A stretch of DNA of 64,000 bases, taken from the IMG/VR virus record IMGVR_UViG_3300035182_002586, positions 62,001-126,000 of that record, one strand, 5' to 3'. The notes under the pieces are model-generated. The model was not told the origin of the DNA. It did not search any database and was given only the letters and a program-made list of their open reading frames with translations. Made by a program: the position numbers and the translations under genes. This document shows, piece after piece, positions 2,669-38,799 of this stretch. Numbering within the stretch: the stretch's first letter is position 1; each line of letters opens with the position of its first letter.

Positions 2669-4936
2669 TCACCCCTTGACTGCCTGGTTGTCGTCGAAGC
2701 TGACGATGATGGGGTCCTGTTGCTTCGGGGCGTCGACTTCGACGACCATCCCGCCGTTCTGCATCTGGTACTCGGCGAGCATCCCCATGCCGCCCGCCAT
2801 GAGGGACTCGTACGAGACCTCCGTGGCCGAGCCCGAGTTGAGGATCGCCGCCTGCTGCGCGGCCTTGTCCACGTACGGAGGCTCCTCCACGAGGGCCTTG
2901 TGGAGCTTCGAGCAGAAGCCCGGACGCGTCTGGTGGACGCAGCTCCCGCACTTCGACCCGGCCTTCACGTACTGGATGACACGAGCGCGGAAGAGCCTGG
3001 CCGGCTCCTCACAGCCCTTACCGTAGTCGTCGTAGACCGTCGGGTCGACGAAGTAGATGCCCTGGAGGCCCTGTTCTGCGAGCACTTCTCGCAGATCCTC
3101 GTTGGCGGCCACGAGGTCGCGCTCGTCGTAGCTGCGGCGGAGAGCATGTGCGAGGTCGTTGCCGTACAGGCCCTCGTTCATGTACTTCGATGCAGTCTTC
3201 ACGATCTCGCGCTTGACGAGGCCCGCCGTCACGTGCTGCGGCGAGTTGCCACGGAACGCCTGCACGGTCTCCATGCGGATACCCGCCTGAGCCGGCGTCG
3301 GCTGGAGCGACGCCCCACGGTACATCGTCTTGAGAGCGTCCTCCGGGGTGCTCCCCAGAACCGAGGCGTTCCGGAGCGTCTGGTCTGCACGACCTGCGAT
3401 CCGGTGGTCCTGGAGAACCGCGTCGGCGGTCTCCCACGTGACCACTTCGGTGGCCTGCTTCGCGAGGGGCTTGCCGTAGAGGAGGCAGCGGCCGATCTTG
3501 TTGTAGACGCAGCCCGAGCACTTCTCGCCAGCCACGACGGCGCGGATACCAGGGTTGTGCTTCGCGATGAAGTCCGACCCCTCGCGGCAGTCCGCGAAGC
3601 TGTCCTGCGTCGTGTAGATCGAACCGTAGAGCCCGGCCTCACGGAAGATCGGCTCCCAGTGCGGACGGGTCTCGTGGAGGTCGGTGAGCGAGAAGGCATA
3701 CTTGAGCGCCTGCCCGAGTTCGACCTCGCTCCGTCCCTTGAGCATCTCGCGACGGAGCAGAGCCACGACTGGAGCTGCCTTGTGCGCGGACATCGCGTAC
3801 TTGGCCGCTTCGTCACGCTTGCGCGTGAGGCTCTCAGCAGCGATGAGCTGGTTGCTCACCGTCTGCGGCGACACGGGGGCGATCGGGGCCTGCGTGCCCG
3901 CACCCACATACGCGTTGCGCGGCGAAGCCACGGCTGCCGTAACAGCCGCCACGACCTGCGCGAGCACGTCTGCGTCCTGCGTTGCTGCGATCGTGCGGAA
4001 CGCGACCTTTGCGTCCGGAACCGAGAGGCGCCCCGAACGAAGGGCGTCGTCGACGGCAGCGTGTGCGGTCTTCTTCTGGCCCGTGAGGTCCGGCGGGAGG
4101 ACGACGGGGGCCGCAGCCACCGTCGGCTTCATGTACTGCGCCGGGTTCACCACAGGCTTCGGAGTCGAGGCTTCCGATCCGTACGAAGCACCTTCCGCGA
4201 GCAGAGCGAGACGGACGCGTTCCTTCGGAGGTGCGTTCGACGCCTGGACCGCCTTGCCCTTCGAGGACTGGACCCGCTCCACCTCTTCGGCGAGGGCCTC
4301 CGAGTAGGGCACCTCGACGACGAGCTGCTTGTGGAAGACCGCGCAGTTGGTGCCGCCGACCGGCCCCTGGAGGGCGTGGGTGCAACCGTGGCACTCCGGC
4401 TTTGCGACGACGAACCGAGCATCGTTCGCGAACTTCCTGACGAAGTTCACGGCCTGCTTCGGGGAGTTGTGGCAACCCGAGAAGTCCGACGCGTCGATGT
4501 AGAGCTTGCCGAGAAGCCCACGCTCTGCGATGAGCGAGGCCAACACCGGGCGAGCTGCTCGCAGCGAGTCGAGGTCGAACCGCTTGACGAGGGCATCGCG
4601 CAACCGAGCGGGGTCCGGCGACTGCATGAGCGCGAGTCGGGCCGTGCGGATGATGTCCTCGGAGGTCGAGCTGATCGGCCCGTGTGCCTGCGAGAGGTCC
4701 CCCATCGTCGCCGGCCGGTGGTCCTTCGGAAGATAGTCCGTTGCCGGACGATCTTCGTGAGCCCACATCGCTTCGAGGTCGGGCGCGATGTTGAGGTTCT
4801 GCTTCGGCAGCACGTCCTGTGCTCGGTACTCGGCGTCATCGACGGCGAGCCACGACACGTCGTTGACGGAACCCTCCTTGGAGGTCGGGATTGCCCCCTC
4901 CTTGAGGAAGTCGGACAGGTCACCGAGATCAGCCAT
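2669..4936 (-). CDS. Large hypothetical head-region protein with three Cys-rich repeat domains
   Basis: Start MADLGDLSDF at 4936; three copies of GLxG-aromatic...C...CxxC...C...K.L. Confidence 0.75.
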   Translation of the reverse strand: MADLGDLSDFLKEGAIPTSKEGSVNDVSWLAVDDAEYRAQDVLPKQNLNIAPDLEAMWAHEDRPATDYLPKDHRPATMGDLSQAHGPISSTSEDIIRTARLALMQSPDPARLRDALVKRFDLDSLRAARPVLASLIAERGLLGKLYIDASDFSGCHNSPKQAVNFVRKFANDARFVVAKPECHGCTHALQGPVGGTNCAVFHKQLVVEVPYSEALAEEVERVQSSKGKAVQASNAPPKERVRLALLAEGASYGSEASTPKPVVNPAQYMKPTVAAAPVVLPPDLTGQKKTAHAAVDDALRSGRLSVPDAKVAFRTIAATQDADVLAQVVAAVTAAVASPRNAYVGAGTQAPIAPVSPQTVSNQLIAAESLTRKRDEAAKYAMSAHKAAPVVALLRREMLKGRSEVELGQALKYAFSLTDLHETRPHWEPIFREAGLYGSIYTTQDSFADCREGSDFIAKHNPGIRAVVAGEKCSGCVYNKIGRCLLYGKPLAKQATEVVTWETADAVLQDHRIAGRADQTLRNASVLGSTPEDALKTMYRGASLQPTPAQAGIRMETVQAFRGNSPQHVTAGLVKREIVKTASKYMNEGLYGNDLAHALRRSYDERDLVAANEDLREVLAEQGLQGIYFVDPTVYDDYGKGCEEPARLFRARVIQYVKAGSKCGSCVHQTRPGFCSKLHKALVEEPPYVDKAAQQAAILNSGSATEVSYESLMAGGMGMLAEYQMQNGGMVVEVDAPKQQDPIIVSFDDNQAVKG

Positions 4937-6701
4937 CTGAGTTCCTCGCGATCGTGGGACGGGGGCGCCCGTAGGTATTGGGCGTATAGTCGTGGACGTC
5001 TTGCTGCCATCGAACGTACGGGGTGTTCGTGTCCTCGTACGTCTGACCGGGGGCGATGGGGGTGTCGCGACCGATCTGCTTCGGGGCGCTCTCCCCATCC
5101 CCCGGCATCTCACTGCCTGCCTGGAAGGGGGTCGTGAAGAGAGGCATGGGACCGCCCGTGACATCCGGGTGTGGCGTGATCGGCGTCGGCTTCGCCGGAG
5201 GCTGCGTGCCCGGCAGCCCCGACTGTGAGTTCACCAGGTTGCCCTTGTCCCCGGGGAAGTAGTCGCTACGTGCAACTGGAGGCTGCATGTCGTTCGGGAG
5301 GATCGCCGTGGCGTCGTCCAGGAAGGCGACGATCGGCCTCGGGGGCTTCCCGTACGGGAACGTCGCGATGAACTCGAAGCCGGGGTTCTCGGCCGCCATC
5401 ACGATGAAGTCGTGGAAGTCCTTCTTCCCTCCGAGGGACGCTTCCAACTGCTTCGCCAGCTCCGAAACCGAGCGTGCGACGACCATCGTGGCTTCACCCT
5501 GGACCGGCTTCGTGTCTGCAAACACGTTGCGGTCACGGAGCTGGACCTCGATGTCCGAACCGTCCGCGCTGGCCGGATCCTTGGTCGGGCCACCGGGGTC
5601 GTGAGGGAGATCCGACGACGGACCCCACACACCCTTGCCCTTGGGGTCCTTGGGGTCCGCCAGCGTGTGCTGGATGCCGTCACCCTTGGCCCCGTACCCG
5701 ATCCCGAAGTCGTTCGCGTCCGTCGGCGTCGTGTCGGTGTTGGTACCCGGCATCGCCGACTCCGCTACGAGCGAGAGCTGCGTCGCGAGCGCGTTGGCTC
5801 GGAGCATGAGCTGCTGAGCCGTGCGTTCGACGAGTTCGTTCTCGTGGTCGCCCGGGTAGTCGTAGTCCCGGGGGCGGTTGTCGTAGCGATCCTGCGAGGG
5901 GTTCTCCCCGCGGTTCCACGACCCCCACGGACCGGGCTGGTCTCCACGATCGAGGTGCTCGACGCGCGGACCTGGAAGTGTCTCGACGGGCAGGGAGGAG
6001 TTCGCCTGCTTGAAGTCCGCCTGGATGTAGGTGTTGGAGGCCGTCTTCTGCTTGTAGCCGGGGAACAGCTCGGCGTTGTTCCCTGTCGGCTGGTCGTTGT
6101 TGAAGGCCGGGAGGGTCTCAGCGTCACCGCCGCCGGGCAGCTCCGAACGCTCCGGGGACTTGTCCTTGTCCTTTCGGACTGCGACCGCTTCCCAGTTCTT
6201 CGCGCTCGGCTTCCCAGCTCCCTCGATGTCCTCGTCCTCCACCTCGTCGAAAGCCTTTTCGGCCTCGTCGACGAAGCGGCTGACATCCTTCTTCTCCCCG
6301 AACGCGAGCTGCGCAAGCCTTGGCTTCCAGTGGGGGGCGTTGATCTCGTCGTGGAGCGTGTCGCAGAGCGAAGAGAGCGACTCGCATGCCTCGTAGAGCC
6401 GCTGACGCAGCTCCTTGACCGGCATGATGTACCCGCGACCGCCGATGTTGCCGTCGGGGCTCACGGTCGCCGACTTCACCCGGGCGAACTGCCGGCAAGC
6501 AGAGAGAGCGTGACCCAAGGCGATGCTCGACTGCCACAGCGTCGCCGCGAGCGGCTTGAGCGCCATGGGGTCGTACTCGTAGTTCTTCGGAATGCTGCGC
6601 TTTGACGGCATCCCGGGAGGTAGCTCCCCTGCCGTTCGCGACATGCCGTCGTCTCCCGGAAGGGAAGCGAGGATCTCCCGCGTTCTTCGCTTGGCGTCCA
6701 A
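4929..6701 (-). CDS. Hypothetical, largely disordered protein (scaffold/head-interior candidate)
   Basis: 590-aa ORF; P/G/D-rich with recurring S-x-[LM]P-G motifs; start uncertain. Confidence 0.7.
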   Translation of the reverse strand: MDAKRRTREILASLPGDDGMSRTAGELPPGMPSKRSIPKNYEYDPMALKPLAATLWQSSIALGHALSACRQFARVKSATVSPDGNIGGRGYIMPVKELRQRLYEACESLSSLCDTLHDEINAPHWKPRLAQLAFGEKKDVSRFVDEAEKAFDEVEDEDIEGAGKPSAKNWEAVAVRKDKDKSPERSELPGGGDAETLPAFNNDQPTGNNAELFPGYKQKTASNTYIQADFKQANSSLPVETLPGPRVEHLDRGDQPGPWGSWNRGENPSQDRYDNRPRDYDYPGDHENELVERTAQQLMLRANALATQLSLVAESAMPGTNTDTTPTDANDFGIGYGAKGDGIQHTLADPKDPKGKGVWGPSSDLPHDPGGPTKDPASADGSDIEVQLRDRNVFADTKPVQGEATMVVARSVSELAKQLEASLGGKKDFHDFIVMAAENPGFEFIATFPYGKPPRPIVAFLDDATAILPNDMQPPVARSDYFPGDKGNLVNSQSGLPGTQPPAKPTPITPHPDVTGGPMPLFTTPFQAGSEMPGDGESAPKQIGRDTPIAPGQTYEDTNTPYVRWQQDVHDYTPNTYGRPRPTIARNSDG

Positions 6702-8454: not shown

Positions 8455-9606
8455 CTAGGCCCACACCTCACCCCTTCGGATCTTGCCGATCAGGGACCGT
8501 GCCACTCCGAATATTTCCGCCAGAGAAGCGTCATTTTCACCTGCGGCCGAACGCGCTCGGATGGAAGCGACCCTTTCCACGTCGAGCTTCCCCGTACGAC
8601 CGGAGGTGCGCCGCGTTCGGTTCTGCTCAGTCCTGGAACCCCAACGACAGTTCGCAGGCCAACCGCGGACCGTGCACTCTGGGCACTTCCCACACGAGTA
8701 GTGGCCGCTCCGGTCGACGCGCAACAACGTGTGCTGCGGAGATGGCTTCACGCCCACGTCTTCAAGGAAGGCGGAGAATTCACCCCTCCACCGCGAGCAC
8801 ATTGTGATGCCGGCCGCGCCGTACTCAGAGAACTTCTCGTGCTTCTCGTTGAAGCATCGGGTCTTGATGCTTGCCCACGTCTTGTACTCTGGTGTCTTGG
8901 TCCCGCCGTGCGCGTAGTTGCCGTGTGCCTCACCTACAGGCACCGGACGGCGATTTAGACTCTGCTCCGCCTTCGACGCCCACCGGACGTTACCGGGTTC
9001 GTAGTTCCCGTTCGGGTTGGGGTAGCGGTCGAGGGAGTAGTCGGGGCCGGGCCTGTGTCCAACATACATGCAGAACGCGATGAAGTCGTTCACCCACGGC
9101 TCGTGGATACGAACGCCTCTACCACCCCACCCCGCATAGTTGCTACTTTTCGGGTTGAGGCAACGGTCTTTCATCGAAATCCAAGCCACATACTCGGGGG
9201 ACTTGATCATCCCGTGCTTGTAGTTCGTTGCCCGCCCGGAAGGTGGCTTGGGCATGCTCGACTTCGGGCGATGGGGGCGTCGATTGTTGTTCTGCTCTTC
9301 GCTGGTAGCCCAACGCAGATTCCCAGGCTCATACCCCCGATCGTTCTCGATTCGATCAAGAGAGTGGCGCAGCGAAGGGCGTGTTCCAACGTGCTCGAAG
9401 AAGGCGGTGAAGTTATTCACCCATCCTTCATAAATCCCGATTCCGCGTCCACCGTAGTCTGAGTACGCTTTATGGCTCGGGTTTAGACACCGAGCCTTGA
9501 TCTGCTGCCAGTAGCGATAAACTTCAGGTGCACTTATCGCCGCCTCTACCAGCCCACTGCGGGAGGCGGACCTCTCTAAGGATGTTGAATTTTTTGCCGC
9601 CGCCAA
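8455..9606 (-). CDS. HNH-like homing endonuclease with three tandem nuclease-like repeats and C-terminal HTH
   Basis: Three copies of Y..W..[IM]K.RC.N.....Y..YG.RGI.....W...F..F...VG.RP....SLDR....G.YEPGN.RW; lower GC than flanks; start uncertain. Confidence 0.75.
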   Translation of the reverse strand: MAAAKNSTSLERSASRSGLVEAAISAPEVYRYWQQIKARCLNPSHKAYSDYGGRGIGIYEGWVNNFTAFFEHVGTRPSLRHSLDRIENDRGYEPGNLRWATSEEQNNNRRPHRPKSSMPKPPSGRATNYKHGMIKSPEYVAWISMKDRCLNPKSSNYAGWGGRGVRIHEPWVNDFIAFCMYVGHRPGPDYSLDRYPNPNGNYEPGNVRWASKAEQSLNRRPVPVGEAHGNYAHGGTKTPEYKTWASIKTRCFNEKHEKFSEYGAAGITMCSRWRGEFSAFLEDVGVKPSPQHTLLRVDRSGHYSCGKCPECTVRGWPANCRWGSRTEQNRTRRTSGRTGKLDVERVASIRARSAAGENDASLAEIFGVARSLIGKIRRGEVWA

Positions 9607-10171
9607 TGGCCTCGAAGATCTTCTGGTAGGGGCGATAGACCTCGTTGTCGTCGGCGAGCTTCGTGAGGGCCTTCACCGCATTGAAGAACCGGTGTCGGAC
9701 CTTGCCTTGTGTGAGGTTCAGTAGCTCAGCCACCTCGGACTGGCAGGTCGTCTGCCACATGCCCACGAGGATGTTCACGTCGGTCTCGTCGAACGCCCCC
9801 GTCAGGTCCCGGCGCATGTCCTCTTCGGTCACGTGGGGGATCGACAGCAGGAACTTGATGCGCTGGATGCCGCGTTCCAGTCTGTAACTGATCGCCGCTT
9901 GGGTGACCTCGAAGATCTCGGCGATGTCCGCCTGCCTCTTGCGCGCGATGAAGTAGAGGTAGATGAGATCCGCTTCCCGCTGGGGGATACGGTCGAGGAG
10001 AGGGGCGATCCGGCTCTCGAAGTCCACGTCCGACAGGAAGGACGAGAACCCCTCGTCGTCCGCCACGGACTCGATCTCGTCGAGTAGGTCGTCCTCTTCG
10101 GAGCCCTCCTCGCCGGAAAAACGGTTCGCGAGTTGTGACGGATCGACGGGAATTACATAGCCAGATGACAT
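9524..10171 (-). CDS. Sigma-70 region-4-like HTH protein with two HTH motifs
   Basis: LDRIPQREADLIYLYF...QADIAEIFEVTQAAISYRLERG and QSEVAELLNLTQGKVRHRF. Confidence 0.7.
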   Translation of the reverse strand: MSSGYVIPVDPSQLANRFSGEEGSEEDDLLDEIESVADDEGFSSFLSDVDFESRIAPLLDRIPQREADLIYLYFIARKRQADIAEIFEVTQAAISYRLERGIQRIKFLLSIPHVTEEDMRRDLTGAFDETDVNILVGMWQTTCQSEVAELLNLTQGKVRHRFFNAVKALTKLADDNEVYRPYQKIFEAIGGGKKFNILREVRLPQWAGRGGDKCT

Positions 10172-10192: not shown

Positions 10193-12214
10193 TCAAGTTG
10201 TCTTGGCGAAGCCAGCTACCCGTTCCGGATGAAACGTGGGCAGGATGGTATCGCAATCCACATCTTGCAGCCGCGCTAGAGCGGCCTTCCGATCCGGTTT
10301 GGGGTCGATCGTCGTGATCGGCAGGTCGATGCGGAGCGTCATCAGCTCCGCGTTGAGTCTGACCTGTTTCTCCGACGAGCGCATCTTGGCATACTGCGAC
10401 TTCGTGAGTCCCGCCAGGTTTGACGCGAAAATCTTGTCGATCGTACCGTACGCTCGGACAAGCCCGAGAAGAACCTTGCGATCGAACCCTACCCCGGGGA
10501 GCTTGTCCGAAGTATCCCCGTACAGCGCACGCAGAGCCACGATCTGGTCCGGGCCTACCCCCCAGGCTTCCTGGATGGTGTCCGGGTCATGAAAGGTTTC
10601 CTTCGCCTTCCCCACCGCAGGGGTCAGCAAGACATCCGTACGGCTGACCACCTGGAGAAGATCTCGGTCGGTGGAGAAGATAAGGTTCCGCTTCCCCGCC
10701 AAGGGGCCGCGTACGAGGGCCGCGATCACGTCGTCGGCCTCTTCCTCCGGATGGTAGGATTGAGACACACCTAGGAGGGGGAGCGTCTCCTTGATCCACG
10801 TGAGCTGCTCGGGGGTGATGGGGAGCTGCTTGCGGTCGGCTTTGTAGCCCGCGTACGCTGCCTTCCGTCGCCCCGAGGAGCCGTCCCACACAACGTGGAT
10901 GAGGGCGCCGGAGTAGCGCTTGACGAAGCTCCCGAGGCTCCTCAGGAACCCCGTGTAGATGCCGGAGGGTCTACCCTTCGAGTCCCTCAGCTCCGAGAGG
11001 CCGGGGGCGTACGCACACCTTGCTGCGAGGTTCAGGCCGTCCACCACTACATGGTCGATCGTCCCGTGAGGGGCCGTCGCAGGGTCCGGCTCTGGAAACG
11101 ACGGATTGTGGTCCATGTCGATCTCCAGGACGGCGCTCATGCTTTCCTCGATCAAACGGACCTCCTCCCCGATCGCTTCCAGGCGACCCACTGCATCCTT
11201 GAGCCAGAGCCACTCCATAGCGCGCTCGTCGACACGAGCACGGGATGGTGGAGTGTAGAACACGTTCACGAATGAATACAAGGGGGTCCAGCGAGACTCC
11301 CATGAGGCCAGACGCCCCAACGTCTTGGTGCGTTCACTCAGATCTACCAGAGAGGCTGCACTGACTTGCCGCGTCACCCTGGAAACAACAGGCTCGGTGG
11401 CCTGCCACTTGGACAGCCAGGACGCCACCCTCTTGAGGACGACGGCCTTCATGGAGAGGGGCTTGGGGTCGAACTTCGTGTAACCGAGGGCCTGGACGAA
11501 CCCGTAGAGGGCCTGCCACTTGGGCACCCACACCGACAAGCGCCGGTGGGCTTCAGCCGGACGGAGCAGTTTGGCCCCGTTGTTTCTCCACAAGAGGACG
11601 GGGCGCATGGACCTGAGCCAAGCGAGAGCTTCCGCCATGCGGCGCTCCACGGCGGGCTTCGGAGCCTTGGTGACGAGCTGGAGGAAGTTGCGGGGGAGGG
11701 TGACGATCGCTTCCTTGGAGCGGAGCTTCACGAGCACCTGCACCTGCGAAAGCTCTTGGATGTCCTCGTGGACAATGGCCTGAATCTGTCGGTAGGGCCC
11801 CGACATGATCAGTACAGTGTCACCCACAGAAATGCCTTGTTCACTCTCTTGGCTGACTTGCGCCTTCATTCGACGCACTTGCGCGTCGGTGGCCAAGGCC
11901 AGCTTGCCGTTACGCTGTAGAACGGCCGCTACATACCGAGTGTTCGCAAGACGTACGTAGACCTGATCCGGGTGCGTCTTCTTGACGAACGCGTACCCAT
12001 CGAATGCGTACCGAACTACCTTGTCCTGCCCTACGGTCGTCACCGCCGCAGGGACGAACACTTCGGCATCCCGGATAGAGCCTCGAATGGACCGGCGGAT
12101 GAGATCGGGATCCTCGCCTTCCGCCTTTGGGCCTAGTTCGAGGATCACCCACTGGTCAGCCACCGCCACCACCGGCCCCCGGCCAGGTACGTTCAAACTC
12201 CCTACGCCAGGCAT
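10193..12214 (-). CDS. Fusion of NusG/RfaH-like (NGN+KOW) domain and 5'-3' exonuclease/flap endonuclease (PolI N-terminal type)
   Basis: N-term WVIL...VFVP...FDGYAFV...VGDTVLIMSGPY; C-term VVDGLN, VVWDG, YKADR, EADDVIA, STDRDLLQ, GDTSDKLPGV. True start probably a GTG near 12160-12172. Confidence 0.8.
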   Translation of the reverse strand: MPGVGSLNVPGRGPVVAVADQWVILELGPKAEGEDPDLIRRSIRGSIRDAEVFVPAAVTTVGQDKVVRYAFDGYAFVKKTHPDQVYVRLANTRYVAAVLQRNGKLALATDAQVRRMKAQVSQESEQGISVGDTVLIMSGPYRQIQAIVHEDIQELSQVQVLVKLRSKEAIVTLPRNFLQLVTKAPKPAVERRMAEALAWLRSMRPVLLWRNNGAKLLRPAEAHRRLSVWVPKWQALYGFVQALGYTKFDPKPLSMKAVVLKRVASWLSKWQATEPVVSRVTRQVSAASLVDLSERTKTLGRLASWESRWTPLYSFVNVFYTPPSRARVDERAMEWLWLKDAVGRLEAIGEEVRLIEESMSAVLEIDMDHNPSFPEPDPATAPHGTIDHVVVDGLNLAARCAYAPGLSELRDSKGRPSGIYTGFLRSLGSFVKRYSGALIHVVWDGSSGRRKAAYAGYKADRKQLPITPEQLTWIKETLPLLGVSQSYHPEEEADDVIAALVRGPLAGKRNLIFSTDRDLLQVVSRTDVLLTPAVGKAKETFHDPDTIQEAWGVGPDQIVALRALYGDTSDKLPGVGFDRKVLLGLVRAYGTIDKIFASNLAGLTKSQYAKMRSSEKQVRLNAELMTLRIDLPITTIDPKPDRKAALARLQDVDCDTILPTFHPERVAGFAKTT

Positions 12215-13685
12215 CTGCCTGCATAGGTAGCAGCTCGTCGTCCTTCGTGGGGGCGAACTTCAAGGGCACCCTCGGAGACTTCTTGGACTCGTCGTGTCCG
12301 CGAGGGAAGTCTAGGGGCACCCCTCCGATGTGGTCCACCTCCGTCAGAGCCCTTTGATCCGAAGAACCAAGGGATCCAACTCCATCAAAGCGGAGAAGGG
12401 GGTCCCTCGGTGTAGCCGGGGGCGGCGGGGGAGCAGGGGCCGGGGGCGGCGGGGGAGCAGGGGCCACCTCGGCAGGAGGGGTAGCTGCTTCGACGGGGCC
12501 GTCTCCCGGGTTCTCCGGAATGTAGGCAGGGGTGGGGGTGGGGGCCGCGACCGGAGGGGTGGGGGCCGGAGCGGACACGGGGGCTGGACCCCCGTAGGAC
12601 TGCGCCACGAAGACGATGGGGGGCTGCGGCCCCATCGGGGGGAGGTTCCCTTGTGCCTGCGACAGCAGGAGGACGTCCGAAAGGAGGCCGGCTTGCGTCA
12701 GAGCACGCCCACGAAGGAAGTACTCTGAGAGGCGCAGCGCGTGTACGCCGTACCGCTTGTAGACCTCTCCCGCGAGGTTTCTGTCGACGTAGATCAGGTC
12801 TGTGTGCATGCCGTTCGCGAGTCGGTATGCGTTCATTGCTGCCTCGGAGATACCACTCACGGTCTCATCCGGCGACGATCTTTCGCACGCCTGCTCGACG
12901 AGGGCCACCGCTTTCCGAGGGTCGTGCAGAGCGAGGAGGATCTCGTAGTAGGTCGAGACAACCCCGAGGTTCAGGTACTCCCGCACCGTCTCGGCGCTGA
13001 CCCTCCCCATCTGCGAGACCATCTCCAGGCGGTTGAGCACGTCACGAACGTGCCCGCCGGAAAAGTCGATGACCATCAACACGGCTTCATCGTCGAAGTC
13101 GACCCCCTCTGCCCGGAGGACCGTCTGCATACGCGCGAGAATCTCTTCCCGCGTGACCTTGCGGATCGTGTACTCCTCACAACGGGATCGGATGGTGCCC
13201 CGGATCTTGTCGGGTTCGGTCGTGCAGAACATGCCGATCATGCGCTTGTCTTCGATCGGCTTGAGGAAGACGTCCTGCGCATCACGGGACATGCGGTGTG
13301 CTTCGTCGAAGAGATAGACCCTCTTCGGGGCTCCGAAGACCGCGAAGGGGAGTTCGTCAACGATGGCACGCGCGTGGTCGATGGTGCCGTTCGAGGCGGC
13401 GTCCTTCTCTACGAAGGCGCGACCCTCTTCACGCAACACGTCCATGCAGTTGTCACACGTGTTACACGGCTCGGGGTCCCCCTTCGGGTCGACGAGCTGC
13501 TCGCAAAGCATCGCTCGGGCGTGGATACGCGCGAGCGTGGTCTTCCCTTGGCCGTGCCCCCCGGAGAAGATGTACGACGTGTCGAGGGCAGAGCCGTTCC
13601 GTAGCCTCGCTCGGAGGATCTGGACGTTGCCCTCTTGCCCCAGCACGTCCGCGTACTTGAGCGGACGATAGCGCGTATCCCACAT
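12156..13685 (-). CDS. dnaX: DNA polymerase III gamma/tau clamp-loader subunit
   Basis: YRP...DVLGQ, GGHGQGKTT, PCNTCDNC, DAASN, DEAH, TIRSRC; Pro-rich tail. Confidence 0.92.
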   Translation of the reverse strand: MWDTRYRPLKYADVLGQEGNVQILRARLRNGSALDTSYIFSGGHGQGKTTLARIHARAMLCEQLVDPKGDPEPCNTCDNCMDVLREEGRAFVEKDAASNGTIDHARAIVDELPFAVFGAPKRVYLFDEAHRMSRDAQDVFLKPIEDKRMIGMFCTTEPDKIRGTIRSRCEEYTIRKVTREEILARMQTVLRAEGVDFDDEAVLMVIDFSGGHVRDVLNRLEMVSQMGRVSAETVREYLNLGVVSTYYEILLALHDPRKAVALVEQACERSSPDETVSGISEAAMNAYRLANGMHTDLIYVDRNLAGEVYKRYGVHALRLSEYFLRGRALTQAGLLSDVLLLSQAQGNLPPMGPQPPIVFVAQSYGGPAPVSAPAPTPPVAAPTPTPAYIPENPGDGPVEAATPPAEVAPAPPPPPAPAPPPPPATPRDPLLRFDGVGSLGSSDQRALTEVDHIGGVPLDFPRGHDESKKSPRVPLKFAPTKDDELLPMQADAWRREFERTWPGAGGGGG

Positions 13686-13772: not shown

Positions 13773-14279
13773 CTACGCCTGACCGATCGCGTCGCGAGCC
13801 ATTGCATCGACATCGATGCCCTTGCTCTCGACCCCGACGAACGACTTGAGGTCGTCATTCCACGCGCCGTAGCGCTTGAGGATGGACGTGAACTCCTCCA
13901 CGTCCGGCGTGCGGAGCTTCCACTTCATCGGCGCCCCGGCGTCCTCTTCGTCCTCTTCGCCGGTGCAGCGCTCCAGCAGGTGGTCGACGAGGGCCATGCG
14001 GGAGTGCGCATCCGCCGAGTTCCAGAGGTCGAGGGCGATCTCGATCGCGAAGTCGTTCTCGATGCGGTGCTCGACGTAACCCGAGAGCTTTCTGACCTTC
14101 CCTCGGACCGGGCGACCGTTCTTCATCGATGCCTCGGAGATGAACACGTAGTCGATGCGCGCCGTCGCCAGCTCCGGGTGGTACTGCGGGATCAACTTCT
14201 TCGCCATCTTGGCGACGGGCTCGGCGTCGAGGTATTCCTTCTTCGCCTTCTTCGCTGCCTTTTCCTTACCTTCTGCCAT
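13773..14279 (-). CDS. Putative phage metallopeptidase-like protein with degenerate active site
   Basis: L..ARI.Y.F...G...DF.I.I....W......R.ALVDH...PDVEEF..I..RYGAW pattern; HExxH replaced by HLLER. Confidence 0.6.
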   Translation of the reverse strand: MAEGKEKAAKKAKKEYLDAEPVAKMAKKLIPQYHPELATARIDYVFISEASMKNGRPVRGKVRKLSGYVEHRIENDFAIEIALDLWNSADAHSRMALVDHLLERCTGEEDEEDAGAPMKWKLRTPDVEEFTSILKRYGAWNDDLKSFVGVESKGIDVDAMARDAIGQA

Positions 14280-14307: not shown

Positions 14308-15009
14308 TCAGCCCGCATCAATCGTCGCTCGCACAAATACACCCACTCGATCGTCTCCCCACGTCTCCCACAGATCGCCGGGGTCCTTCACCTTTTTGCC
14401 GCTCGGGGTTAGGGGCTGAGGGTACGACACCTGATGCACCTTGAACACTTCCCCGTGAGAACGAGCGAAGCTCTTGTTGCTCCGCTGCCCCCGTTCGTCC
14501 ATGTCGTACCCCATCCACACATCCGTCACGGTTCGCCGCATGACGGAGATCAGAGGGTCTACCACACGAGCCGTGAGGGTCGCGACGACGCCCGGGAAGT
14601 GCTTCTGGATGGGGAAGAGGTCGAACCCGCCCTCCACCAACCAGATGGAGCCGGTCTCCCAAACGTGCGGCATCGCCTCCCCAAGACCGAAGAGAACGGC
14701 TTCGGCCTTGTCCACAATGTAGTCCATATAGCCCGACCGATCACGGTCGACATGTCGAAACTGCAACCCCCGGACGGCGCCAAGGGTCGTGGTGAGGGGG
14801 AGCACGAACACGTCATCGAGCCGGCGCCCGTAGTGGGACCACTCGATGAAGTCCTTCGGCAGGTCGAGGTTGTCCGGGAGCCCGTAGAGCTGCCCGAGCC
14901 GGAAGCGGGACACCTGCGTCTCGGATACCCCCCGGGCCGCTAGTTCATCGAGAACCCGCTCGTCCACCCTTGCGTGGGCGCAGTTCACGATGTCGTCGAG
15001 CCAGGTCAT
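14308..15009 (-). CDS. DNA primase-like Toprim protein without zinc-binding domain
   Basis: L..RGVS, LFGL, WLVEGGFD, GYDMDERG, KDPGD; ATG 15009 lies 11 nt after GGTGTA. Confidence 0.8.
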   Translation of the reverse strand: MTWLDDIVNCAHARVDERVLDELAARGVSETQVSRFRLGQLYGLPDNLDLPKDFIEWSHYGRRLDDVFVLPLTTTLGAVRGLQFRHVDRDRSGYMDYIVDKAEAVLFGLGEAMPHVWETGSIWLVEGGFDLFPIQKHFPGVVATLTARVVDPLISVMRRTVTDVWMGYDMDERGQRSNKSFARSHGEVFKVHQVSYPQPLTPSGKKVKDPGDLWETWGDDRVGVFVRATIDAG

Positions 15010-15061
15010 GGCCACCCCCATACACCAGGTCGGAACGTTCCGGCGGTGTAGAACGACCGAG

Positions 15062-17027: not shown

Positions 17028-20000
17028 ATGGCCGTTCGAGTCCAAGACACGATCCTCCCGAAGAACGACGCCGACTTCCCCGTCGTCGACTCATCCTCCA
17101 TCAAGGGTGGGCACCAGGAAGTCGCCAACGCCACGGCCCGGGATGCGATCACAGCCTCGCACCGCTCCATCGGCATGTTCGTCACCACGCAGGACGACGG
17201 CAAGGTGTGGAAGCTCGGCAACGACCTCCTCACCTGGACTGAGTTCACCGGTGGTGGAGGCGGCGGGTTCACCGCAGGTGGAGATCTCACCGGTACGAGC
17301 ACGAACCAGACGGTGGCCGCCATCCAGGGCATCCCCTCGATGGATCCGGTCTTCAAGGCCGATCGAGATCTCGTCGAGATCAAGAGCACGACGACGACCT
17401 CTGGCATCACCCTCAACCTGGCTTCCCCTCGCGACATTGTAAGCGACGGCACGCACATCTACGTCGCTCAGAACGGCCAGAACGCGCCTATCGCAGGGTC
17501 ACAGAACGTCTGGAAGCTCACGATGTCCGGCGGGACCGTAACCGCCGCCGTTGCGTGCGACCTCACGGCAGGCCCCTTGGGTCTCGTCACCGTGGTGCGT
17601 TGCCGAGGCATCGAGCAAGATGCCACCTACCTCTACGTCGCCACGTGGAACGCGCAGAACATCGCCATCATCGACAAGGCGACGATGACGCTCGTGGGGT
17701 GGGGCTACACAGGCGGCACCAGCGCGATGAGCGTGTGCGCCGACGGTGCAGGTAACTTCTACGCCTGCAATGACTTCAGTGAGATCTGGAAGTTTTCCAC
17801 TGCCGCGTGCATCGGTGCAGCTCCGAATACGGTGACTCCCGTACTCACGCTCCTCCCCAACGGAGGGACGTCTTTCGCAAGGTGGATCACCTACGGTGGG
17901 GGGTTCATTTGGGCTGCAAGTCCCGGTGGATACCTTGCCAAGATCGACCCCACGACGCTGACCGAAGTAACGGTCGTCACCGACGTGAACGGCGACACTG
18001 CCCTGATGGTGGCGAGGTACGCCTTCGGTGCACTGTGGGTCGCGAGCAACAACTCCACAGGTATCATCTACAAGGTCGATCCTACGACCCTCACGTGGAT
18101 CACCACCATCAGTGGGTTTGCACACCCATCCACGCCGATGTTTGGGACCATCCCGAACATCATCGAGGGTCCAGACGACCTCGGTAACCCCAATGCTTGG
18201 TTGTGGGTCTGCTCCATGGAGCAGAAGTTCGGTGGCCCCTACGTCGCAGCCGTCGATCCCGTCGGCCTTGTGCTCGCCTCCTCCACATACCAGCCGAGTG
18301 CGAACAACAGAGACGCCTACGAGGGTCTCTGTGTCGTCGGGAACTACGTGTACGCGGGAGGGTTCGATTCAAGCTGGGGACCGAGCACACCGCACATCGG
18401 CTACGTGAATGCCGTCACGAGTGCTTCGGGCAAGGTCACCGGAAGCTCCACGACGACAACTACTTGGGCCCTGGGGTACAAGCCGATCGACGGAGATCTT
18501 TCTGGTCCGATCGACAAGAACTCCGTCCACTACCTGCGTGGTGTGGCTGTACCTGATCCGGCCGGAGTCGTCACGGGGTACGTCCCCACCCTCGCCCAAT
18601 CGACCTTCCCACTGCTCAATGCGATCGCGTGGGACTCTAGCCACCAGAAGATGTGGGTGGGTCTTGCAGGAGACACTGCCGGCGCAGTCTTCTCCTACGA
18701 CCCTACAACCACCATCGGGGCCTATCACACCCCCAGTGACCCGGGCTACGCAGTAATCAGCCAATACCTGGCAGTCGCAGTCGACGCCAACTATGTGTTC
18801 GTAGCAGGAAGGAGCACTTTCGCGGGGCTCAGTGCCAACATCTTCGCTCTCGATAAGCTGACGGGAGCTGTAGTTGGTGTTGCAGCCTTCTACCGTGCTT
18901 CCAGTCTCTACTCTGACGGGACGTACTTGTGGGCAGTGACAAACCAAGGTTTCAGTGCAGGTCTAGCCAAGATCTCCATCGCGGCTATGATCGCAGCCGG
19001 ACCTACGGGTAGCCCGCCAGCCGCAACTGCATCCCTCCTGATGACCGGCCTACAAGGGGTCACAGGCGATGGTACGTGGGTCTACGTCTCCAACAACAAC
19101 ACCAGCAACATCCACCGCATCGACCCGGCTACTGCACTGGTCAGCGCGTCCTATGCAGACCCCGCAGTCAGCGGTGTCTATGGCCTGGTCATGGCTGGCG
19201 GTCATGTGTGGTGTGCAGCCTATGACCACGTACTGGAGGTAGACCCTGCGGGTATGACCCTCGTGAGTACTACCCCGCTAGGCACTTTCAACATCACGTC
19301 CATCGCATATGACGGGACCCGGGTGTGGGCGGGGTCTCTCTCTACGCGGGATATCTTCGGACTCACGGTGCCTGGGGGTGGACTCGCATACACGATCACT
19401 CCAACGGACATCTCCGATAACCACAAGAGTCTAGCCTATGACGGAACGTATCTGTGGGGGGTAGGTAACACCAGCACCACAGACGCTATCACCCGCTTCA
19501 CAGATCCGGCGGGTGTGGAGAACCTCCGTTACTTCGGCCCGTGGCGTCTCGACTACGCTGCTGCTGGTGGGACGCTTGCAGGCGATGTCACTGGTGCTCC
19601 GGGCGCCAACACGGTCACCCGTCTTCAAGGCTTTACGGTCAACAGTGCAGTCCCAACGGTAGGTGCTGCTCTAGTCTGGCAGTTCCCTGCGGGATGGACG
19701 CCGACCACGCCGGGAGGCGACCTCTCAGGTAGTTCGTTCGCAACGCCAACGGTGGCTAGGATCAACGGCTACACCGTCAGCGCAACGCCTACGCTCTCTG
19801 GGCAAGTTCTCACGTGGAACGGTTCGGCGTGGGTCGCTCAGGCTGTCGGAGGGTCCAACCCCGGCACGCCGCAGACGGGCAACAACTACGCCCCCGTCAA
19901 GGTCAACGTCTCGGGTGCGGCCATCCAATCGTGGATCAACCTGAACGGCGGCACGGGCTACCGCTCGGATCTCGTGGACGGTGACGTAGACGGGATGCTC

Positions 20001-23096: not shown

Positions 23097-24029
23097 CTAG
23101 AGGACCGAAACACCCCGGAACTTCTTCAAGTGCTCCGGGATCTCGGGCTTCAGCTCCGGAGGCGCCCCCGACATCACCGCCTCGAAGTTCTCCAACACTC
23201 CGGGCTTGGCCATCGAGGTCATCCCGAAGTTGGAAAGGGCGAACAGCTCGGCGAACGATTCCCCGTCGTTGATGCTGTACTTCGTCGTGTGCCACTCGGC
23301 CCGGTCGAAGTCCACCTTGAGGTGGTGTTTCGCCTCGTATCTATGACCAAGCTCGTGGGTCACCACGTAGCTGAAGCCACCGTAGCCCGACCCGGCCCGC
23401 TCGATGCGCCCGCCAACCGTCGCGCGGATCCAGAGGATGTCCCCCTCCCGCCCGTACTTCCCGCTCGCCGTCCCACGGAAGTCCTTGGGCCCCGCCAGGT
23501 GGACTTTGATCCCACCGGAGAGCGCTCCTCGGTGCCACCCCTTCAAGCCGGCGAAGATGCCCTCCATCTCCGCGATCATGGCGTCCAGCTTCTCATCGTT
23601 GACGCCGACCATGTTGACGTAGGTGTTACCCCCGACCTTCTTCTCTCGGGTGAGAGCCTTCGCACCCCCCTCCACCGAAGAGAACGCCGACACCCAGGCG
23701 GGGACCAACGCCTTCATTCGCTGGTCTTCCCACAGCGAGCGAATCGAGTTTGTCAGGGCGCCAGGAAGGTAGTGCTCGTAGTACTCTACGTCCCTCTCGA
23801 TGGAACGATAGAACCGGTCCAGCTCTTCCTTCTCCCGCTTCATCCCCTTGGGCGTGTAGCGCGTCTGGAAGTGGAAGTTGTGCACGATCCACTTTGCGAA
23901 CTCCTGAAGCTCGTGCTTCGGAGGCTTCTCCGGGTCGTAGGACAGCAACTTGTCGACCTTCGACACGAAGTCGTGTTCGAGAGACGCTGCCTGGAAGCGC
24001 CGCGCCACCTTGATCGCGAGAGGGTCCAT
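23097..24029 (-). CDS. Zincin-type metallopeptidase with KVARRF leader
   Basis: VTHELGH plus downstream ESFAELF; ATG 24029. Confidence 0.7.
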   Translation of the reverse strand: MDPLAIKVARRFQAASLEHDFVSKVDKLLSYDPEKPPKHELQEFAKWIVHNFHFQTRYTPKGMKREKEELDRFYRSIERDVEYYEHYLPGALTNSIRSLWEDQRMKALVPAWVSAFSSVEGGAKALTREKKVGGNTYVNMVGVNDEKLDAMIAEMEGIFAGLKGWHRGALSGGIKVHLAGPKDFRGTASGKYGREGDILWIRATVGGRIERAGSGYGGFSYVVTHELGHRYEAKHHLKVDFDRAEWHTTKYSINDGESFAELFALSNFGMTSMAKPGVLENFEAVMSGAPPELKPEIPEHLKKFRGVSVL

Positions 24030-24092
24030 CACACGTGTAGGTAGATAAGCAGAACCATCGACAAGAGCCCGGTGGCCGGTGTATTTCGGGGT

Positions 24093-24800
24093 ATGACCGA
24101 AGCAGGCATCCTCACCGGGCACGAGATTGTCGAGCAACACAAGGCCGGGCGCATCCGCATCTACCCCTTCGTACCGGAGCGCGTGAACCCCGGCTCCTAC
24201 GATCTCACCCTCGGCTCGAAGGTTGCCGTCTACAAGAACCTGGTGGTCCCCGACTTCGAACCCATGGAGAAGGACGGCATCCCGGGGGAGTGCATCCGCG
24301 TCCAGCATGACGTGGACCCTCACATCCCGTTCCGCGCCAGACCCGGTATCAACTGCCTCGACGCTGCGATGGCGAACGAGATCGCCGTCTACGAGATGGA
24401 CAACCGTGGATTTCTCCTGCGACCCGGCATCGGTTACCTGATGCACACGGCGGAGCGCGTGCAGTCGGATTCGTTCGTCCCTGTGATCGACGGTAAGTCG
24501 AGCATCGGCCGCCTCTTCATCCTGGTCCACTTCACGGCCGGGTACGGAGAGATCGGTTTCGACGGGCAGTACACGCTGGAGGTCATGGCGACCCACCCTG
24601 TCATCATCTACCCCGGAGAGCCGATCGCACAGATCCGCTTCCACACGACGCGGGGCAAGGTCGAGTCGTACCAGGGGAACTACCAAGGACAGGACGCCAT
24701 GGGACCGGTCGCGTCGAAGTCTCACAAGCAGATCGAAGCCTGCGGTCTCCGAGTCGGGCATCACTCGCAGCCGATGGATCGATCCCGCGACGACGTGTAG
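24093..24800 (+). CDS. dcd: dCTP deaminase
   Basis: VNPGSYDLTLG, GKSSIGRL, HFTAGYGEIGFDGQYTLE, PIAQI.F, Y.G.YQGQ. Confidence 0.9.
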   Translation: MTEAGILTGHEIVEQHKAGRIRIYPFVPERVNPGSYDLTLGSKVAVYKNLVVPDFEPMEKDGIPGECIRVQHDVDPHIPFRARPGINCLDAAMANEIAVYEMDNRGFLLRPGIGYLMHTAERVQSDSFVPVIDGKSSIGRLFILVHFTAGYGEIGFDGQYTLEVMATHPVIIYPGEPIAQIRFHTTRGKVESYQGNYQGQDAMGPVASKSHKQIEACGLRVGHHSQPMDRSRDDV

Positions 24801-24992
24801 TACGATCGTCGTCGCGTACGCGATGTGGTTGGCTGCCCATCTTACCCTCCCCATCGTCCGAGCGTTCATCCGAGAGGAGAAGGAAATCAAGCGGAAGTGG
24901 TCCTACACTATACCTGAGGTCCCGGTGTACCGTACGATCAACTACCGCACGGTTGCCCTCGTCGAACGCCAAGTACAGAACGGGAAGAAGTG

Positions 24993-32480: not shown

Positions 32481-33063
32481 TCGCCGCGAGGACTTCCAGG
32501 GCGCGAGCCTCCAGCTCCGCCCTGGTCCCTTCGTTCACGATGACGTGATCGGCGACACTCACCTTCTCCATGAGCGGGAGCTGTGAAGCAATACGAGCCC
32601 GAGCAGCTTCTTCGGATAGTTCGTCACGCGCCATGATGCGCTGAATCTGCACCGCAGGGGACACGGCGACGACGACCAGGGGTCGGTAGTGCCTGTGAAG
32701 CCCCTTCTCGATCAAGAGGGCTGCATCGACACACACGATGCAGCCCTTCTTGCGTTCTGTCTCGACACGAGCCGCGATGGCCTCGAAGAGGATGGGGCCC
32801 AGGGTGGTGTCGAGACGGTTCAGCTCCGACACCGAACCGAACACGTGCGCCCCGAGCGCCTTCCGATCCAGCGTCCCGTCCGCTGTCAGGAACTTCGCCC
32901 CGAACGTCTTCACGATGACATCCAAGCCCGGCTCCCCGGGGCGCACGATGTCCCTGGATACGAGGTCCCCGTCGACCACAGAGACACCCGCAGCCGCGAA
33001 GACCGTGGACACGGTGCTCTTCCCCGACGCTATCCCACCCGTCAGCCCGAACACGATGGCCAT
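32458..33063 (-). CDS. coaE: Dephospho-CoA kinase
   Basis: GLTGGIASGKSTV, LDRKALG..VF, DAALLIE, RIASQLP...K...AD.VI.N. Confidence 0.92.
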   Translation of the reverse strand: MAIVFGLTGGIASGKSTVSTVFAAAGVSVVDGDLVSRDIVRPGEPGLDVIVKTFGAKFLTADGTLDRKALGAHVFGSVSELNRLDTTLGPILFEAIAARVETERKKGCIVCVDAALLIEKGLHRHYRPLVVVAVSPAVQIQRIMARDELSEEAARARIASQLPLMEKVSVADHVIVNEGTRAELEARALEVLAAISSPPAV

Positions 33064-33073
33064 GTTGCTGGAC

Positions 33074-33090
33074 TACACCGACGTGGTGTA
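33074..33090. promoter_or_regulatory. Back-to-back GGTGTA motifs serving coaE and the methyltransferase (representative of more than 20 copies)
   Basis: TACACC-gacgt-GGTGTA, 10 and 12 nt from the two divergent ATGs. Confidence 0.7.
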
Positions 33091-33102
33091 GGGACCACCT
33101 CG

Positions 33103-38797: not shown

Positions 38798-38799
38798 GG

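What the first reader, a model, noticed from the sequence alone, without database searches (positions are those of the whole stretch)
10193..12214. NusG/RfaH-like domain fused to a PolI-type 5'-3' exonuclease through three Trp-rich repeats
Seen in sequence: one open frame joins NGN+KOW, three ~36-aa repeats (RLSVWVPKWQALYGFV / RVASWLSKWQATEPVV / RLASWESRWTPLYSFV) and a complete FEN domain, between dnaX and a sigma-like gene. I do not know this architecture from characterised proteins. Inference: it may tether a 5' nuclease to RNA polymerase (R-loop removal, or replication-coupled late transcription). GAGGAAAGC-ATG near 11140 could also give a separate exonuclease product.
Basis: partly seen in the sequence, partly recalled or inferred. 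Interest (0 to 1): 0.65.

Follow-up and report, generated by a model that had tools for sequence, protein, structure and literature searches.

The report
NusG-like factor fused to flap nuclease
A clade of huge bacteriophages encodes one protein that joins a NusG-type RNA-polymerase elongation factor to the phage's only detected flap endonuclease through a repeat-built helical spacer; the architecture is real, conserved and apparently undescribed, and may place a DNA/RNA-hybrid nuclease on the transcription machinery.

Summary
Window 10193-12214 (-) is one intact open frame. It holds an NGN plus KOW module (NusG family), about 175 residues of long helices built from three significant ~37-residue repeats, a short disordered spacer, and a complete PolA-type 5' nuclease (FEN) with every catalytic carboxylate conserved.

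The window lies in a 529-kb phage record. At least about 120 protein clusters and about 45 viral contigs (up to 659 kb) keep the same fusion. It always sits in one cassette: Toprim-like, phage metallopeptidase, clamp loader, NusG-like, FEN, sigma-region-4 protein.

More distant phages carry NusG-like and FEN as separate abutting genes. Some have the cassette without FEN, and one has a direct fusion without a spacer. The spacer-type fusion forms a single clade, so it is not an assembly artefact.

The phage has a family-A DNA polymerase without its own 5' nuclease. No RNase HI, RNA polymerase or second FEN was detected.

Binding to host RNA polymerase is inferred from homology only; the one complex prediction gave no verdict. 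The proposed internal start at M358 is not conserved. I found no paper describing this architecture. I rate it a new variant of known kinds, of moderate to high interest, with the mechanism still open.

The parts
10193..12214 (-). Whole open frame of the NusG-like/FEN fusion (673 aa from ATG 12214). The probable real start is GTG 12163 (656 aa) or GTG 12172 (659 aa, as called in the protein database). The stop codon is at 10193-10195.
11843..12160 (-). NGN domain (residues about 19-124). It carries the family-invariant strands WV[VI]LEL and GYAF[IV].
   Evidence: TIGR00922 E 7e-10 and RfaH 8e-7. PDB NusG 2lq8. AF2 pLDDT above 90 with an alpha/beta topology. Invariant columns.
11666..11836 (-). 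KOW domain (residues about 127-183), a five-stranded barrel with the motif QGIxVGDxVxIxSGPY.
11126..11659 (-). Helical spacer (residues about 186-363), four to five long helices. Its length varies across the family (92-216 aa), and no known fold or family matches it.
   Evidence: AF2 models (linker alone pLDDT 85, pTM 0.30). No Pfam, PHROG, NCBIfam, PDB or Atlas match. Length range.
11495..11542 (-). Repeat 1 core, RLSVWVPKWQALYGFV (residues 225-240).
11384..11431 (-). Repeat 2 core, RVASWLSKWQATEPVV (residues 262-277).
11267..11314 (-). Repeat 3 core, RLASWESRWTPLYSFV (residues 301-316).
11054..11125 (-). Acidic, low-confidence spacer between the last helix and the FEN (residues 364-387). Its length is 4-36 residues across the family.
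10232..11053 (-). PolA-type 5'-3' exonuclease / flap endonuclease domain (residues 388-661). The carboxylates D392, D444, E492, D494, D495, D516, D518, D567 and D570 align with the Taq active-site motifs; all are invariant in 117 sequences except D444, which is conserved in at least 90%. The C-terminal helix aligns with Taq LEFGSLL.
   Evidence: Pfam. NCBIfam pola E 5e-44. Taq alignment. Foldseek match to M. smegmatis FenA, E 3.8e-18. Invariant columns.
11141..11152 (-). It is present in this sequence but not conserved.
9524..10171 (-). Downstream cassette gene, 215 aa. It has an acidic N-terminus, a true sigma region 4, a second HTH, and no region 2. It is 21 nt from the fusion's stop.
12156..13685 (-). 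Upstream cassette gene, a DnaX/RFC-like clamp-loader ATPase. Its TGA stop overlaps the fusion's probable GTG start.
13773..14279 (-). Cassette gene, a putative phage metallopeptidase (PF18894).
14308..15021 (-). Cassette gene, a Toprim-like (primase-like) protein.

Best explanation
The gene encodes a phage-specific NusG-family transcription-elongation factor that carries the phage's only detected flap endonuclease on the same chain.

Shown:
- The protein has an N-terminal NGN+KOW module, a repeat-built helical spacer of variable length, and a catalytically intact PolA-type 5' nuclease.
- The fusion is conserved across one clade of huge phages.
- The two halves are adjacent, start/stop-overlapping separate genes in more distant phages.
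- The gene is always embedded between a clamp loader and a sigma-region-4 protein.

Inferred:
- The NGN domain docks on the clamp helices of the host RNA polymerase, as NusG, RfaH and Spt5 do. No RNA polymerase was detected in the phage genome.
- The KOW domain and spacer project the nuclease towards the upstream DNA and RNA-exit side of the elongation complex.
- There the nuclease would cut 5' flaps or degrade the RNA strand of RNA:DNA hybrids. Candidate substrates are R-loops behind the polymerase, or transcripts used as replication primers, where transcription and phage replication meet.
- The phage's family-A DNA polymerase lacks its own 5' nuclease and no RNase HI was detected, so the same enzyme probably also removes primers during replication.
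For: Domain identities.

Catalytic residues conserved in 117 sequences.

Fusion conserved:
- 118 of the 120 listed protein clusters cover at least 92% of the query at 37-50% identity. JGI's automatic names already say '5'-3' exonuclease/transcription antitermination factor NusG'.
- About 45 IMG/VR loci carry the same fusion.

Cassette conserved in about 60 loci.

Gene-fusion (Rosetta-stone) evidence:
- In L011, L015, L134, L135 and L137, NusG-like (167-191 aa) and FEN (303-315 aa) are separate adjacent genes; in L011 and L015 the two reading frames abut or overlap.
- L138 is a direct fusion of 474 aa lying on a separate branch of the FEN tree.

The spacer-type fusion is one clade, support 99.

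Own-genome content:
- One FEN and one NusG-like gene.
- A PolA without a FEN domain.
- No hits for RNAP beta or beta', T7-like RNAP, sigma region 2 or RNase HI.

Precedent that NusG/Spt5 factors bridge 5'->3' nucleases to elongation complexes: archaeal Spt5-FttA (PMC11616081) and yeast Spt5-Xrn2 (PMC11695829).
Against: - No direct evidence that the NGN module binds any RNA polymerase. Its scores are far below the curated NusG and RfaH cut-offs (39 against 135.7 bits), and the host is unknown.
- Some cassette-bearing phages have the NusG-like gene without any FEN. One of them is a 90%-complete 230-kb genome. The nuclease is therefore dispensable for whatever the NusG-like protein does.
- The split-type FENs end in ...[YFI]SLF(D), which resembles a beta-clamp-binding motif (from my own knowledge). 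That points to a replisome job.
- PolA-type FENs need a free 5' end. In a long transcript that end is far from the polymerase, so the substrate geometry is unclear.
- Adjacent co-expressed genes can fuse without any mechanistic coupling.
Confidence: 0.4

Rival explanations
1. Two independent jobs on one chain. The FEN is simply the phage's Okazaki-primer and flap nuclease, and the NusG-like part is a separate transcription factor. The fusion arose once from neighbouring co-translated genes and persists because it is harmless or fixes a 1:1 dosage. The nuclease is not delivered to RNA polymerase.
For: - The FEN is the only detected 5' nuclease and the PolA lacks one.
- The cassette is otherwise about replication: Toprim-like protein and clamp loader.
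- Split-type FENs carry a clamp-motif-like SLF tail.
- Cassettes exist without FEN.
- The spacer-type fusion has a single origin, as a frozen accident would.
Against: - A spacer of about 170 aa, built from repeats and varying from one to four units, was added and kept.
- A second, direct fusion exists on a separate branch (L138).
- In split forms the two genes are always immediately adjacent, and in L011 and L015 their reading frames abut or overlap.
- Only 3 of 42 members of the fused clade are split, and one of those is split by a single nonsense codon.
Confidence: 0.25
2. Replication-coupled transcription. The protein bridges host RNA polymerase (through the NGN domain) to the replisome or a sliding clamp (through the FEN). 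Together with the sigma-region-4 neighbour it makes phage late transcription depend on replicating or nicked DNA. This would work like T4 gp55, gp33 and the gp45 clamp.
For: - Clamp loader, NusG-like and sigma-region-4 genes are invariably adjacent, even where FEN is missing.
- No sigma region 2 is found in the genome, while NGN and sigma region 2 use the same docking site on RNAP (plus established knowledge of NusG, RfaH and sigma competition).
- The neighbour has a genuine sigma region 4, which docks on the beta flap.
- FENs commonly bind sliding clamps (established knowledge), and split-type FENs end in an SLF-type tail.
Against: - No sliding clamp was detected in the phage.
- The fused proteins lack the SLF tail.
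- The conserved 'PDxILxAFF' that looked PIP-like aligns with the ordinary C-terminal helix of Taq's 5' nuclease.
- There is no homology to gp33 or gp55.
Confidence: 0.15
3. A covalent 'torpedo'. The nuclease acts on nascent RNA as a 5'->3' exoribonuclease, held on the elongation complex by the NusG-like module. It would terminate transcription or shut off host transcription. This would be a bacterial-virus counterpart of Spt5-Xrn2 or Spt5-FttA.
For: In archaea and eukaryotes, NusG/Spt5 factors bridge and stimulate 5'->3' ribonucleases at the RNA exit channel (PMC11616081, PMC11695829). The architecture puts a 5' nuclease next to a KOW domain.
Against: - PolA-type FENs are known as structure-specific nucleases on duplex DNA and RNA:DNA hybrids (established knowledge), not as single-strand RNases.
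- All closest structures are DNA flap nucleases.
- A torpedo needs an entry cut, and no endoribonuclease partner is evident.
Confidence: 0.1
4. Artefact. A frameshift, misassembly or read-through falsely joins two genes in this assembly.
For: Rare relatives are split (L007, L008, L130).
Against: The same fused frame, spacer included, occurs in well over 100 independent assemblies from several sources, at 37-50% identity.
Confidence: 0.01

Closest known systems
Bacterial NusG and its paralogs (RfaH, LoaP, UpxY)
   Same: Same two-domain core: an NGN domain followed by a KOW domain with the canonical GDxVxIxxGP[FY] motif. Detected with the NusG, RfaH, UpxY and LoaP models and with PDB NusG.
   Different: - Scores are far below every curated cut-off, so it is not an equivalog of any of them.
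- About 490 extra C-terminal residues (spacer plus nuclease).
- Phage-encoded.
- The KOW loop reads LRSK where NusG has IFGR (my own recollection of the NusG sequence, not tested).
- The 2021 NusG review lists extra domains such as T. maritima DII but has no occurrence of 'nuclease', 'fused' or 'fusion' (PMC7819879).
DNA polymerase I 5' nuclease domain and stand-alone bacterial or phage FENs (Taq, M. smegmatis FenA, E. coli ExoIX/Xni, T5 D15, T4 RNase H)
   Same: Same fold and same active-site carboxylates, with the H3TH region and the C-terminal helix present.
   Different: Here the nuclease is fused at its N-terminus to a transcription factor instead of at its C-terminus to a polymerase. The phage's PolA is encoded about 245 kb away and lacks this domain.
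Spt5-FttA (archaea) and Spt5-Xrn2 (yeast) pre-termination complexes
   Same: A NusG/Spt5-family factor physically links a 5'->3' nuclease to the elongation complex (PMC11616081, PMC11695829). This is the closest functional parallel.
   Different: Those links are non-covalent. The nucleases are a beta-CASP enzyme and an XRN enzyme acting on RNA, whereas here the link is a covalent fusion to a PolA-type FEN. Any action on RNA or in termination is untested.
T4 late-transcription apparatus (gp55, gp33, gp45 clamp, gp44/62 loader)
   Same: Clamp-loader and RNAP-docking factor genes are clustered. One factor would use the sigma-2 site (clamp helices) and another the sigma-4 site (beta flap).
   Different: There is no sequence relationship, no clamp was found, and no clamp-binding tail is present on the fused protein. 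This is an analogy only.

Membership tests
NusG/Spt5 family (NGN + KOW) | An NGN domain recognisable by sequence and fold. | tested here: met
   TIGR00922 aligns model positions 33-164 of 172 (E 7e-10). PDB NusG hits at 6e-5 and 9.5e-8. AF2 gives an alpha/beta domain at residues 21-124 with pLDDT above 90. The Pfam NGN model alone is below threshold (E 0.01).
NusG/Spt5 family (NGN + KOW) | A KOW domain with the conserved Gly-rich motif directly after the NGN domain. | tested here: met
   QGIxVGDxVxIxSGPY is invariant or nearly so in 117 sequences. It aligns to the NusG KOW domain. AF2 gives a five-strand barrel at residues 133-182.
NusG/Spt5 family (NGN + KOW) | Binds the RNA polymerase clamp helices. 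| tested here: inconclusive
   The complex prediction with E. coli beta' residues 220-340 returned 'no answer'. It is not evidence for or against binding. This needs biochemistry.
NusG proper / RfaH (NCBIfam equivalogs) | A score above the curated cut-off of the equivalog model. | tested here: not met
   NusG scores 39.0 bits against a cut-off of 135.7. RfaH scores 29.2 bits against 144.5. The protein belongs to the family but is not NusG or RfaH.
PolA-type 5'-3' exonuclease / FEN (PF02739 + PF01367) | Both Pfam domains score above their gathering thresholds. | tested here: met
   90.8 bits against 34.3, and 47.2 bits against 40.
PolA-type 5'-3' exonuclease / FEN (PF02739 + PF01367) | A full set of metal-binding carboxylates. 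| tested here: met
   D392, D444, E492, D494, D495, D516, D518, D567 and D570 align with the Taq motifs vDG, vfD, EADD, DkD and GDxSD. All are invariant in 117 sequences except D444, which is conserved in at least 90%.
PolA-type 5'-3' exonuclease / FEN (PF02739 + PF01367) | The FEN fold. | tested here: met
   Foldseek gives E 3.8e-18 and target TM 0.77 to M. smegmatis FenA, and also matches ExoIX, Taq and T5 FEN.
PolA-type 5'-3' exonuclease / FEN (PF02739 + PF01367) | Flap endonuclease or 5' exonuclease activity. | not testable with these tools
   Needs an enzyme assay.
Sliding-clamp-binding nucleases (PIP-box or beta-motif bearing) | A C-terminal clamp-binding motif. | tested here: not met
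   For the fused protein, the conserved PDxILxAFF aligns with Taq's ordinary C-terminal helix LEFGSLL, and the tail is variable. Only the distant split-type FENs end in ...SLF(D).

The most novel reading that the evidence does not exclude
The NusG-like module and the adjacent sigma-region-4 protein together replace a sigma factor or co-activator on host RNA polymerase. The NGN domain would sit on the clamp helices and region 4 on the beta flap. The tethered FEN would couple this complex to nicks, flaps or primer ends on replicating phage DNA. Phage gene expression would then be licensed by replication intermediates: a new, NusG-based version of T4-style replication-coupled transcription. Alternatively, the protein could be a covalent Spt5-nuclease-type terminator in a bacterial system.
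Probability: 0.12. Interest if true: 0.85.

Novelty: new variant of a known kind. Interest (0 to 1): 0.62.

Why it matters
NusG/Spt5 is the only transcription factor conserved in all domains of life. Its known bacterial paralogs keep the plain two-domain plan.

A large, conserved phage family in which that factor carries a catalytically intact 5' nuclease would be a new class of NusG paralog. It would also be a natural covalent version of the Spt5-nuclease partnerships recently visualised in archaea and eukaryotes.

The finding gives a concrete, expressible protein with which to ask how huge phages coordinate transcription with replication and deal with RNA:DNA hybrids. The conserved six-gene cassette looks like a core module of this phage group.

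Tried and rejected
- Complex prediction of the NGN domain (residues 15-125) with E. coli beta' 220-340: 'no answer' (0.32 against a mark of 0.34). I do not use it as evidence either way.
No read or RNA check of the junction was made, and I did not try to get round it.
- A PIP-box or clamp-binding reading of the conserved C-terminal 'PDxILxAFF': rejected. It aligns with the canonical last helix of Taq's 5' nuclease, and L138 has the ordinary LEFKSF form.
- Sliding clamp in the phage: no hit with PF00712, PF02768, TIGR00663 or PF02916. A divergent clamp is not excluded.
- Spacer identity: nothing in Pfam, PHROGs, NCBIfam, PDB sequences, Foldseek PDB, the ESM Atlas by features or by shape (best TM 0.30). 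I treat it as generic long helices.
- Internal start at M358: no relative has Met in that column.
- Stand-alone close relatives of the NGN-KOW half: only 5 short proteins were found. The two contigs I inspected (P0122 in L007, P0125 in L008) carry split copies of the same gene.
- Cellular genomes: of 241 FEN-bearing loci in species-representative genomes, only 3 match both halves. All three are in MAG contigs that carry the phage cassette.
- Literature: no paper holds 'NusG' together with 'huge phages'. None of the papers found for NusG with exonuclease, jumbo phage or NusG-like phage terms is about such a fusion, judging from titles and abstract openings.
- I did not run the exhaustive representative-protein search. 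The word search plus two contig scans already answered the distribution question.
Full report
**1. What is there**

Window 10193-12214 on the minus strand is a single intact open frame of 673 codons from the first ATG. Its codon-position GC (0.65/0.45/0.76) matches the other genes of this 62-65% GC sequence.

Relatives begin one to four residues before a conserved WV[VI]LEL strand, and the protein database calls a 659-aa product. The real start is therefore probably GTG at 12163 (MADQW..., overlapping the TGA of the upstream gene) or GTG at 12172.

**2. Domains**

The C-terminal 290 residues are a complete PolA-type 5'-3' exonuclease / flap endonuclease.
- Both Pfam domains score above threshold.
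- NCBIfam Pol I models give E 5e-44 over their first 250 positions.
- Taq polymerase matches at 2.4e-26.
- The AlphaFold model matches M. smegmatis FenA, ExoIX, Taq and T5 FEN (Foldseek E down to 3.8e-18).
- The carboxylates that align with Taq's vDG, vfD, EADD, DkD and GDxSD motifs are invariant in 117 family members, apart from D444, which is conserved in at least 90%. The nuclease should be active.

The N-terminal 170 residues are an NGN plus KOW module.
- The full-length NusG model aligns across both domains (E 7e-10), followed by RfaH, UpxY and LoaP.
- A PHROG of 'transcription antiterminators' matches at 2.7e-6.
- T. maritima NusG structures match at 6e-5, or 9.5e-8 with the family profile.
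- The model gives an alpha/beta domain (residues 21-124) and a five-strand barrel (133-182) at pLDDT above 90.
- All scores lie far below the curated cut-offs, so the protein is a member of the NusG family but is neither NusG nor RfaH.

Residues 186-363 lie between the two modules.
- They form four or five long helices and match no family or fold.
Pairwise scores are 43-48 against about 20 +/- 4 for shuffles.
- The family consensus shows the unit RLxxWxxxGxxL...LDxxP three times.
- Spacer length ranges from 92 to 216 residues across the family, with between zero and five RLxxW-type motifs.
- A short acidic, disordered stretch (364-387) precedes the nuclease.

**3. Where it lives**

The window is part of a 528,957-bp IMG/VR virus record. 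Most large ORFs nearby have no Pfam match.

Relatives sit on contigs of up to 659 kb. One related genome is 469,617 bp with direct terminal repeats. This is a clade of huge phages.

In the window's genome I found the following.
- One FEN and one NusG-like gene, both being this gene.
- A family-A DNA polymerase without a FEN domain.
- No hit for Pol III alpha, RNAP beta or beta', T7-type RNAP, sigma region 2, RNase HI, DnaN or T4 gp45.

Absence of Pfam hits does not exclude very divergent proteins.

**4. Is the fusion real and conserved**

Yes.
- The word-based search of 5.8 billion proteins returned 192 hits. Of the 120 listed, 118 cover at least 92% of the query at 37-50% identity, are 567-691 aa long and carry both FEN domains. 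JGI's automatic names already read '5'-3' exonuclease/transcription antitermination factor NusG'.
- A scan of IMG/VR gave about 45 further fused loci.
- Searching the NGN-KOW half alone found only five short proteins.
- One of them, in L007, is the same gene with a single in-frame TGA where close kin have Gly (RL*DW against RLGDW).
- Another, in L008, is a two-gene version: a 315-aa NGN-KOW-spacer protein and a 290-aa FEN with an ATGA overlap.
- Among species-representative cellular genomes, only 3 of 241 FEN-bearing loci match both halves. All three lie on MAG contigs that carry the phage cassette.

**5. The cassette and its variants**

I scanned all fetched loci with HMMs of the three parts and with the window's neighbours. 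About 60 loci share one cassette: Toprim-like protein, phage metallopeptidase, clamp loader, NusG-like, FEN, sigma-region-4 protein.

The variants are as follows.
- (a) Fusion with the helical spacer. This is the majority.
- (b) Fusion with a spacer too diverged for my HMM (L009, L133).
- (c) A direct fusion of 474 aa without a spacer (L138).
- (d) Separate adjacent genes, NusG-like of 167-191 aa and FEN of 303-315 aa, without a spacer (L011, L015, L134, L135, L137); in L011 and L015 the two reading frames abut or overlap.
- (e) NusG-like only, placed directly between the clamp loader and the sigma-4 gene (L151, L157/158, L160/161). One of these genomes is 90% complete and has no FEN hit at all.

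A quick maximum-likelihood tree of FEN domains puts all spacer-type fusions, together with L007, L008 and L130, in one clade (support 99). The old split forms fall outside it. L138 sits on a long separate branch, so its placement is unsure.

So the NusG-like/sigma-4/clamp-loader trio is the constant core. FEN is an add-on that sits next to NusG-like and has been fused to it at least once, and possibly twice.

The sigma-like neighbour has a genuine region 4 (SigF sigma-4 at 5.5e-8), a second HTH and a conserved N-terminal motif, but no region 2. No terminator-like site separates the five minus-strand genes.

**6. How it most likely works**

Shown: the architecture, the intact active site, the conservation, and the gene-neighbourhood and fusion pattern.

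Inferred: the NGN domain docks on the host RNAP clamp helices, as in every studied family member. The KOW domain and spacer hold the nuclease near the upstream DNA and RNA-exit side. The nuclease then processes 5' flaps or the RNA strand of RNA:DNA hybrids where transcription and phage replication meet.

The enzyme probably doubles as the phage's primer-removal nuclease, because the PolA lacks one and no RNase HI was detected.

The closest functional parallels are the Spt5-bridged nucleases FttA and Xrn2 (PMC11616081, PMC11695829).

I put 0.4 on this model. The rivals are:
- two unrelated jobs on one chain, 0.25;
- a T4-like bridge between RNAP and the replisome for replication-coupled transcription, 0.15;
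- a covalent RNA 'torpedo', 0.10;
- artefact, 0.01.

**7. What did not work**

- The one complex prediction gave no verdict.
- My first idea of a PIP-like C-terminal motif was wrong. It is the ordinary last helix of the PolA nuclease domain.
- Only the distant split-type FENs end in a beta-clamp-like ...SLF(D) tail. Its resemblance to clamp-binding motifs is from my own knowledge and is untested.

**8. Novelty**

Both halves belong to well-known families, and automatic annotation has already noticed both COGs.

I found no paper that describes or discusses the fusion. A 2021 review of NusG diversity has no occurrence of 'nuclease', 'fused' or 'fusion'.

I classify it as a new variant of known kinds: a new, phage-specific class of NusG paralog with a covalently attached nuclease, embedded in a conserved replication/transcription cassette. 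Interest is 0.62.

Noticed in passing
window 8455-9606 (-): A 383-aa protein directly downstream of the cassette. It has three tandem ~90-residue repeats (Y..W...K.RC.N...Y..YGGRGI...W...F..F...VG.RP...SLDR...YEPGN.RWA...EQ..NRR) and a C-terminal HTH-like tail. It has no Pfam hit apart from a weak one (E 0.039) far below the curated cut-off.
   Followed up: no
window 9524-10171 (-) and about 40 homologs (alignment A4): The 'sigma-like' neighbour has a true sigma region 4 but no region 2, and the whole 529-kb genome gives no sigma region 2 hit. It also has a conserved N-terminal motif GYVIPVDPxELANRF, a second HTH (TQGRVRHRFF) and a conserved tail NILREVxLPQW.
   Followed up: partly
L009:4155-6041; L091:1293-4007; L111:1221-3959: Other rearrangements occur inside the same cassette. 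In L009 the phage metallopeptidase is fused to the clamp loader (628 aa). In L091 and L111 the clamp loaders are 904-912 aa, about twice the usual size, which suggests an insertion or intein.
   Followed up: no
L011, L015, L134, L135, L137 (FEN genes): All five split-type FENs end in ...[YFI]SLF(D), a tail that resembles bacterial beta-clamp-binding motifs. The fused proteins lack it.
   Followed up: partly
window 17028-22463 (+), 36227-39004 (-), 2669-5164 (-), 23097-24890 (-): Very large ORFs of 1811, 925, 831 and 597 aa have no Pfam match at E <= 0.001.
   Followed up: no
whole record G000 (528,957 bp): IMG/VR labels the record 'provirus', and the encoding contig is 620 kb. Its kin include a 469,617-bp genome with direct terminal repeats and scaffolds of up to 659 kb. 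Whether this copy is integrated or a free huge-phage genome was not examined.
   Followed up: no
window 32689-34017 (+) and 44317-46107 (+): An N6/N4 DNA methyltransferase (PF01555, E 6e-26) and a von Willebrand factor A domain protein (E 3e-15) are encoded in the same window.
   Followed up: no
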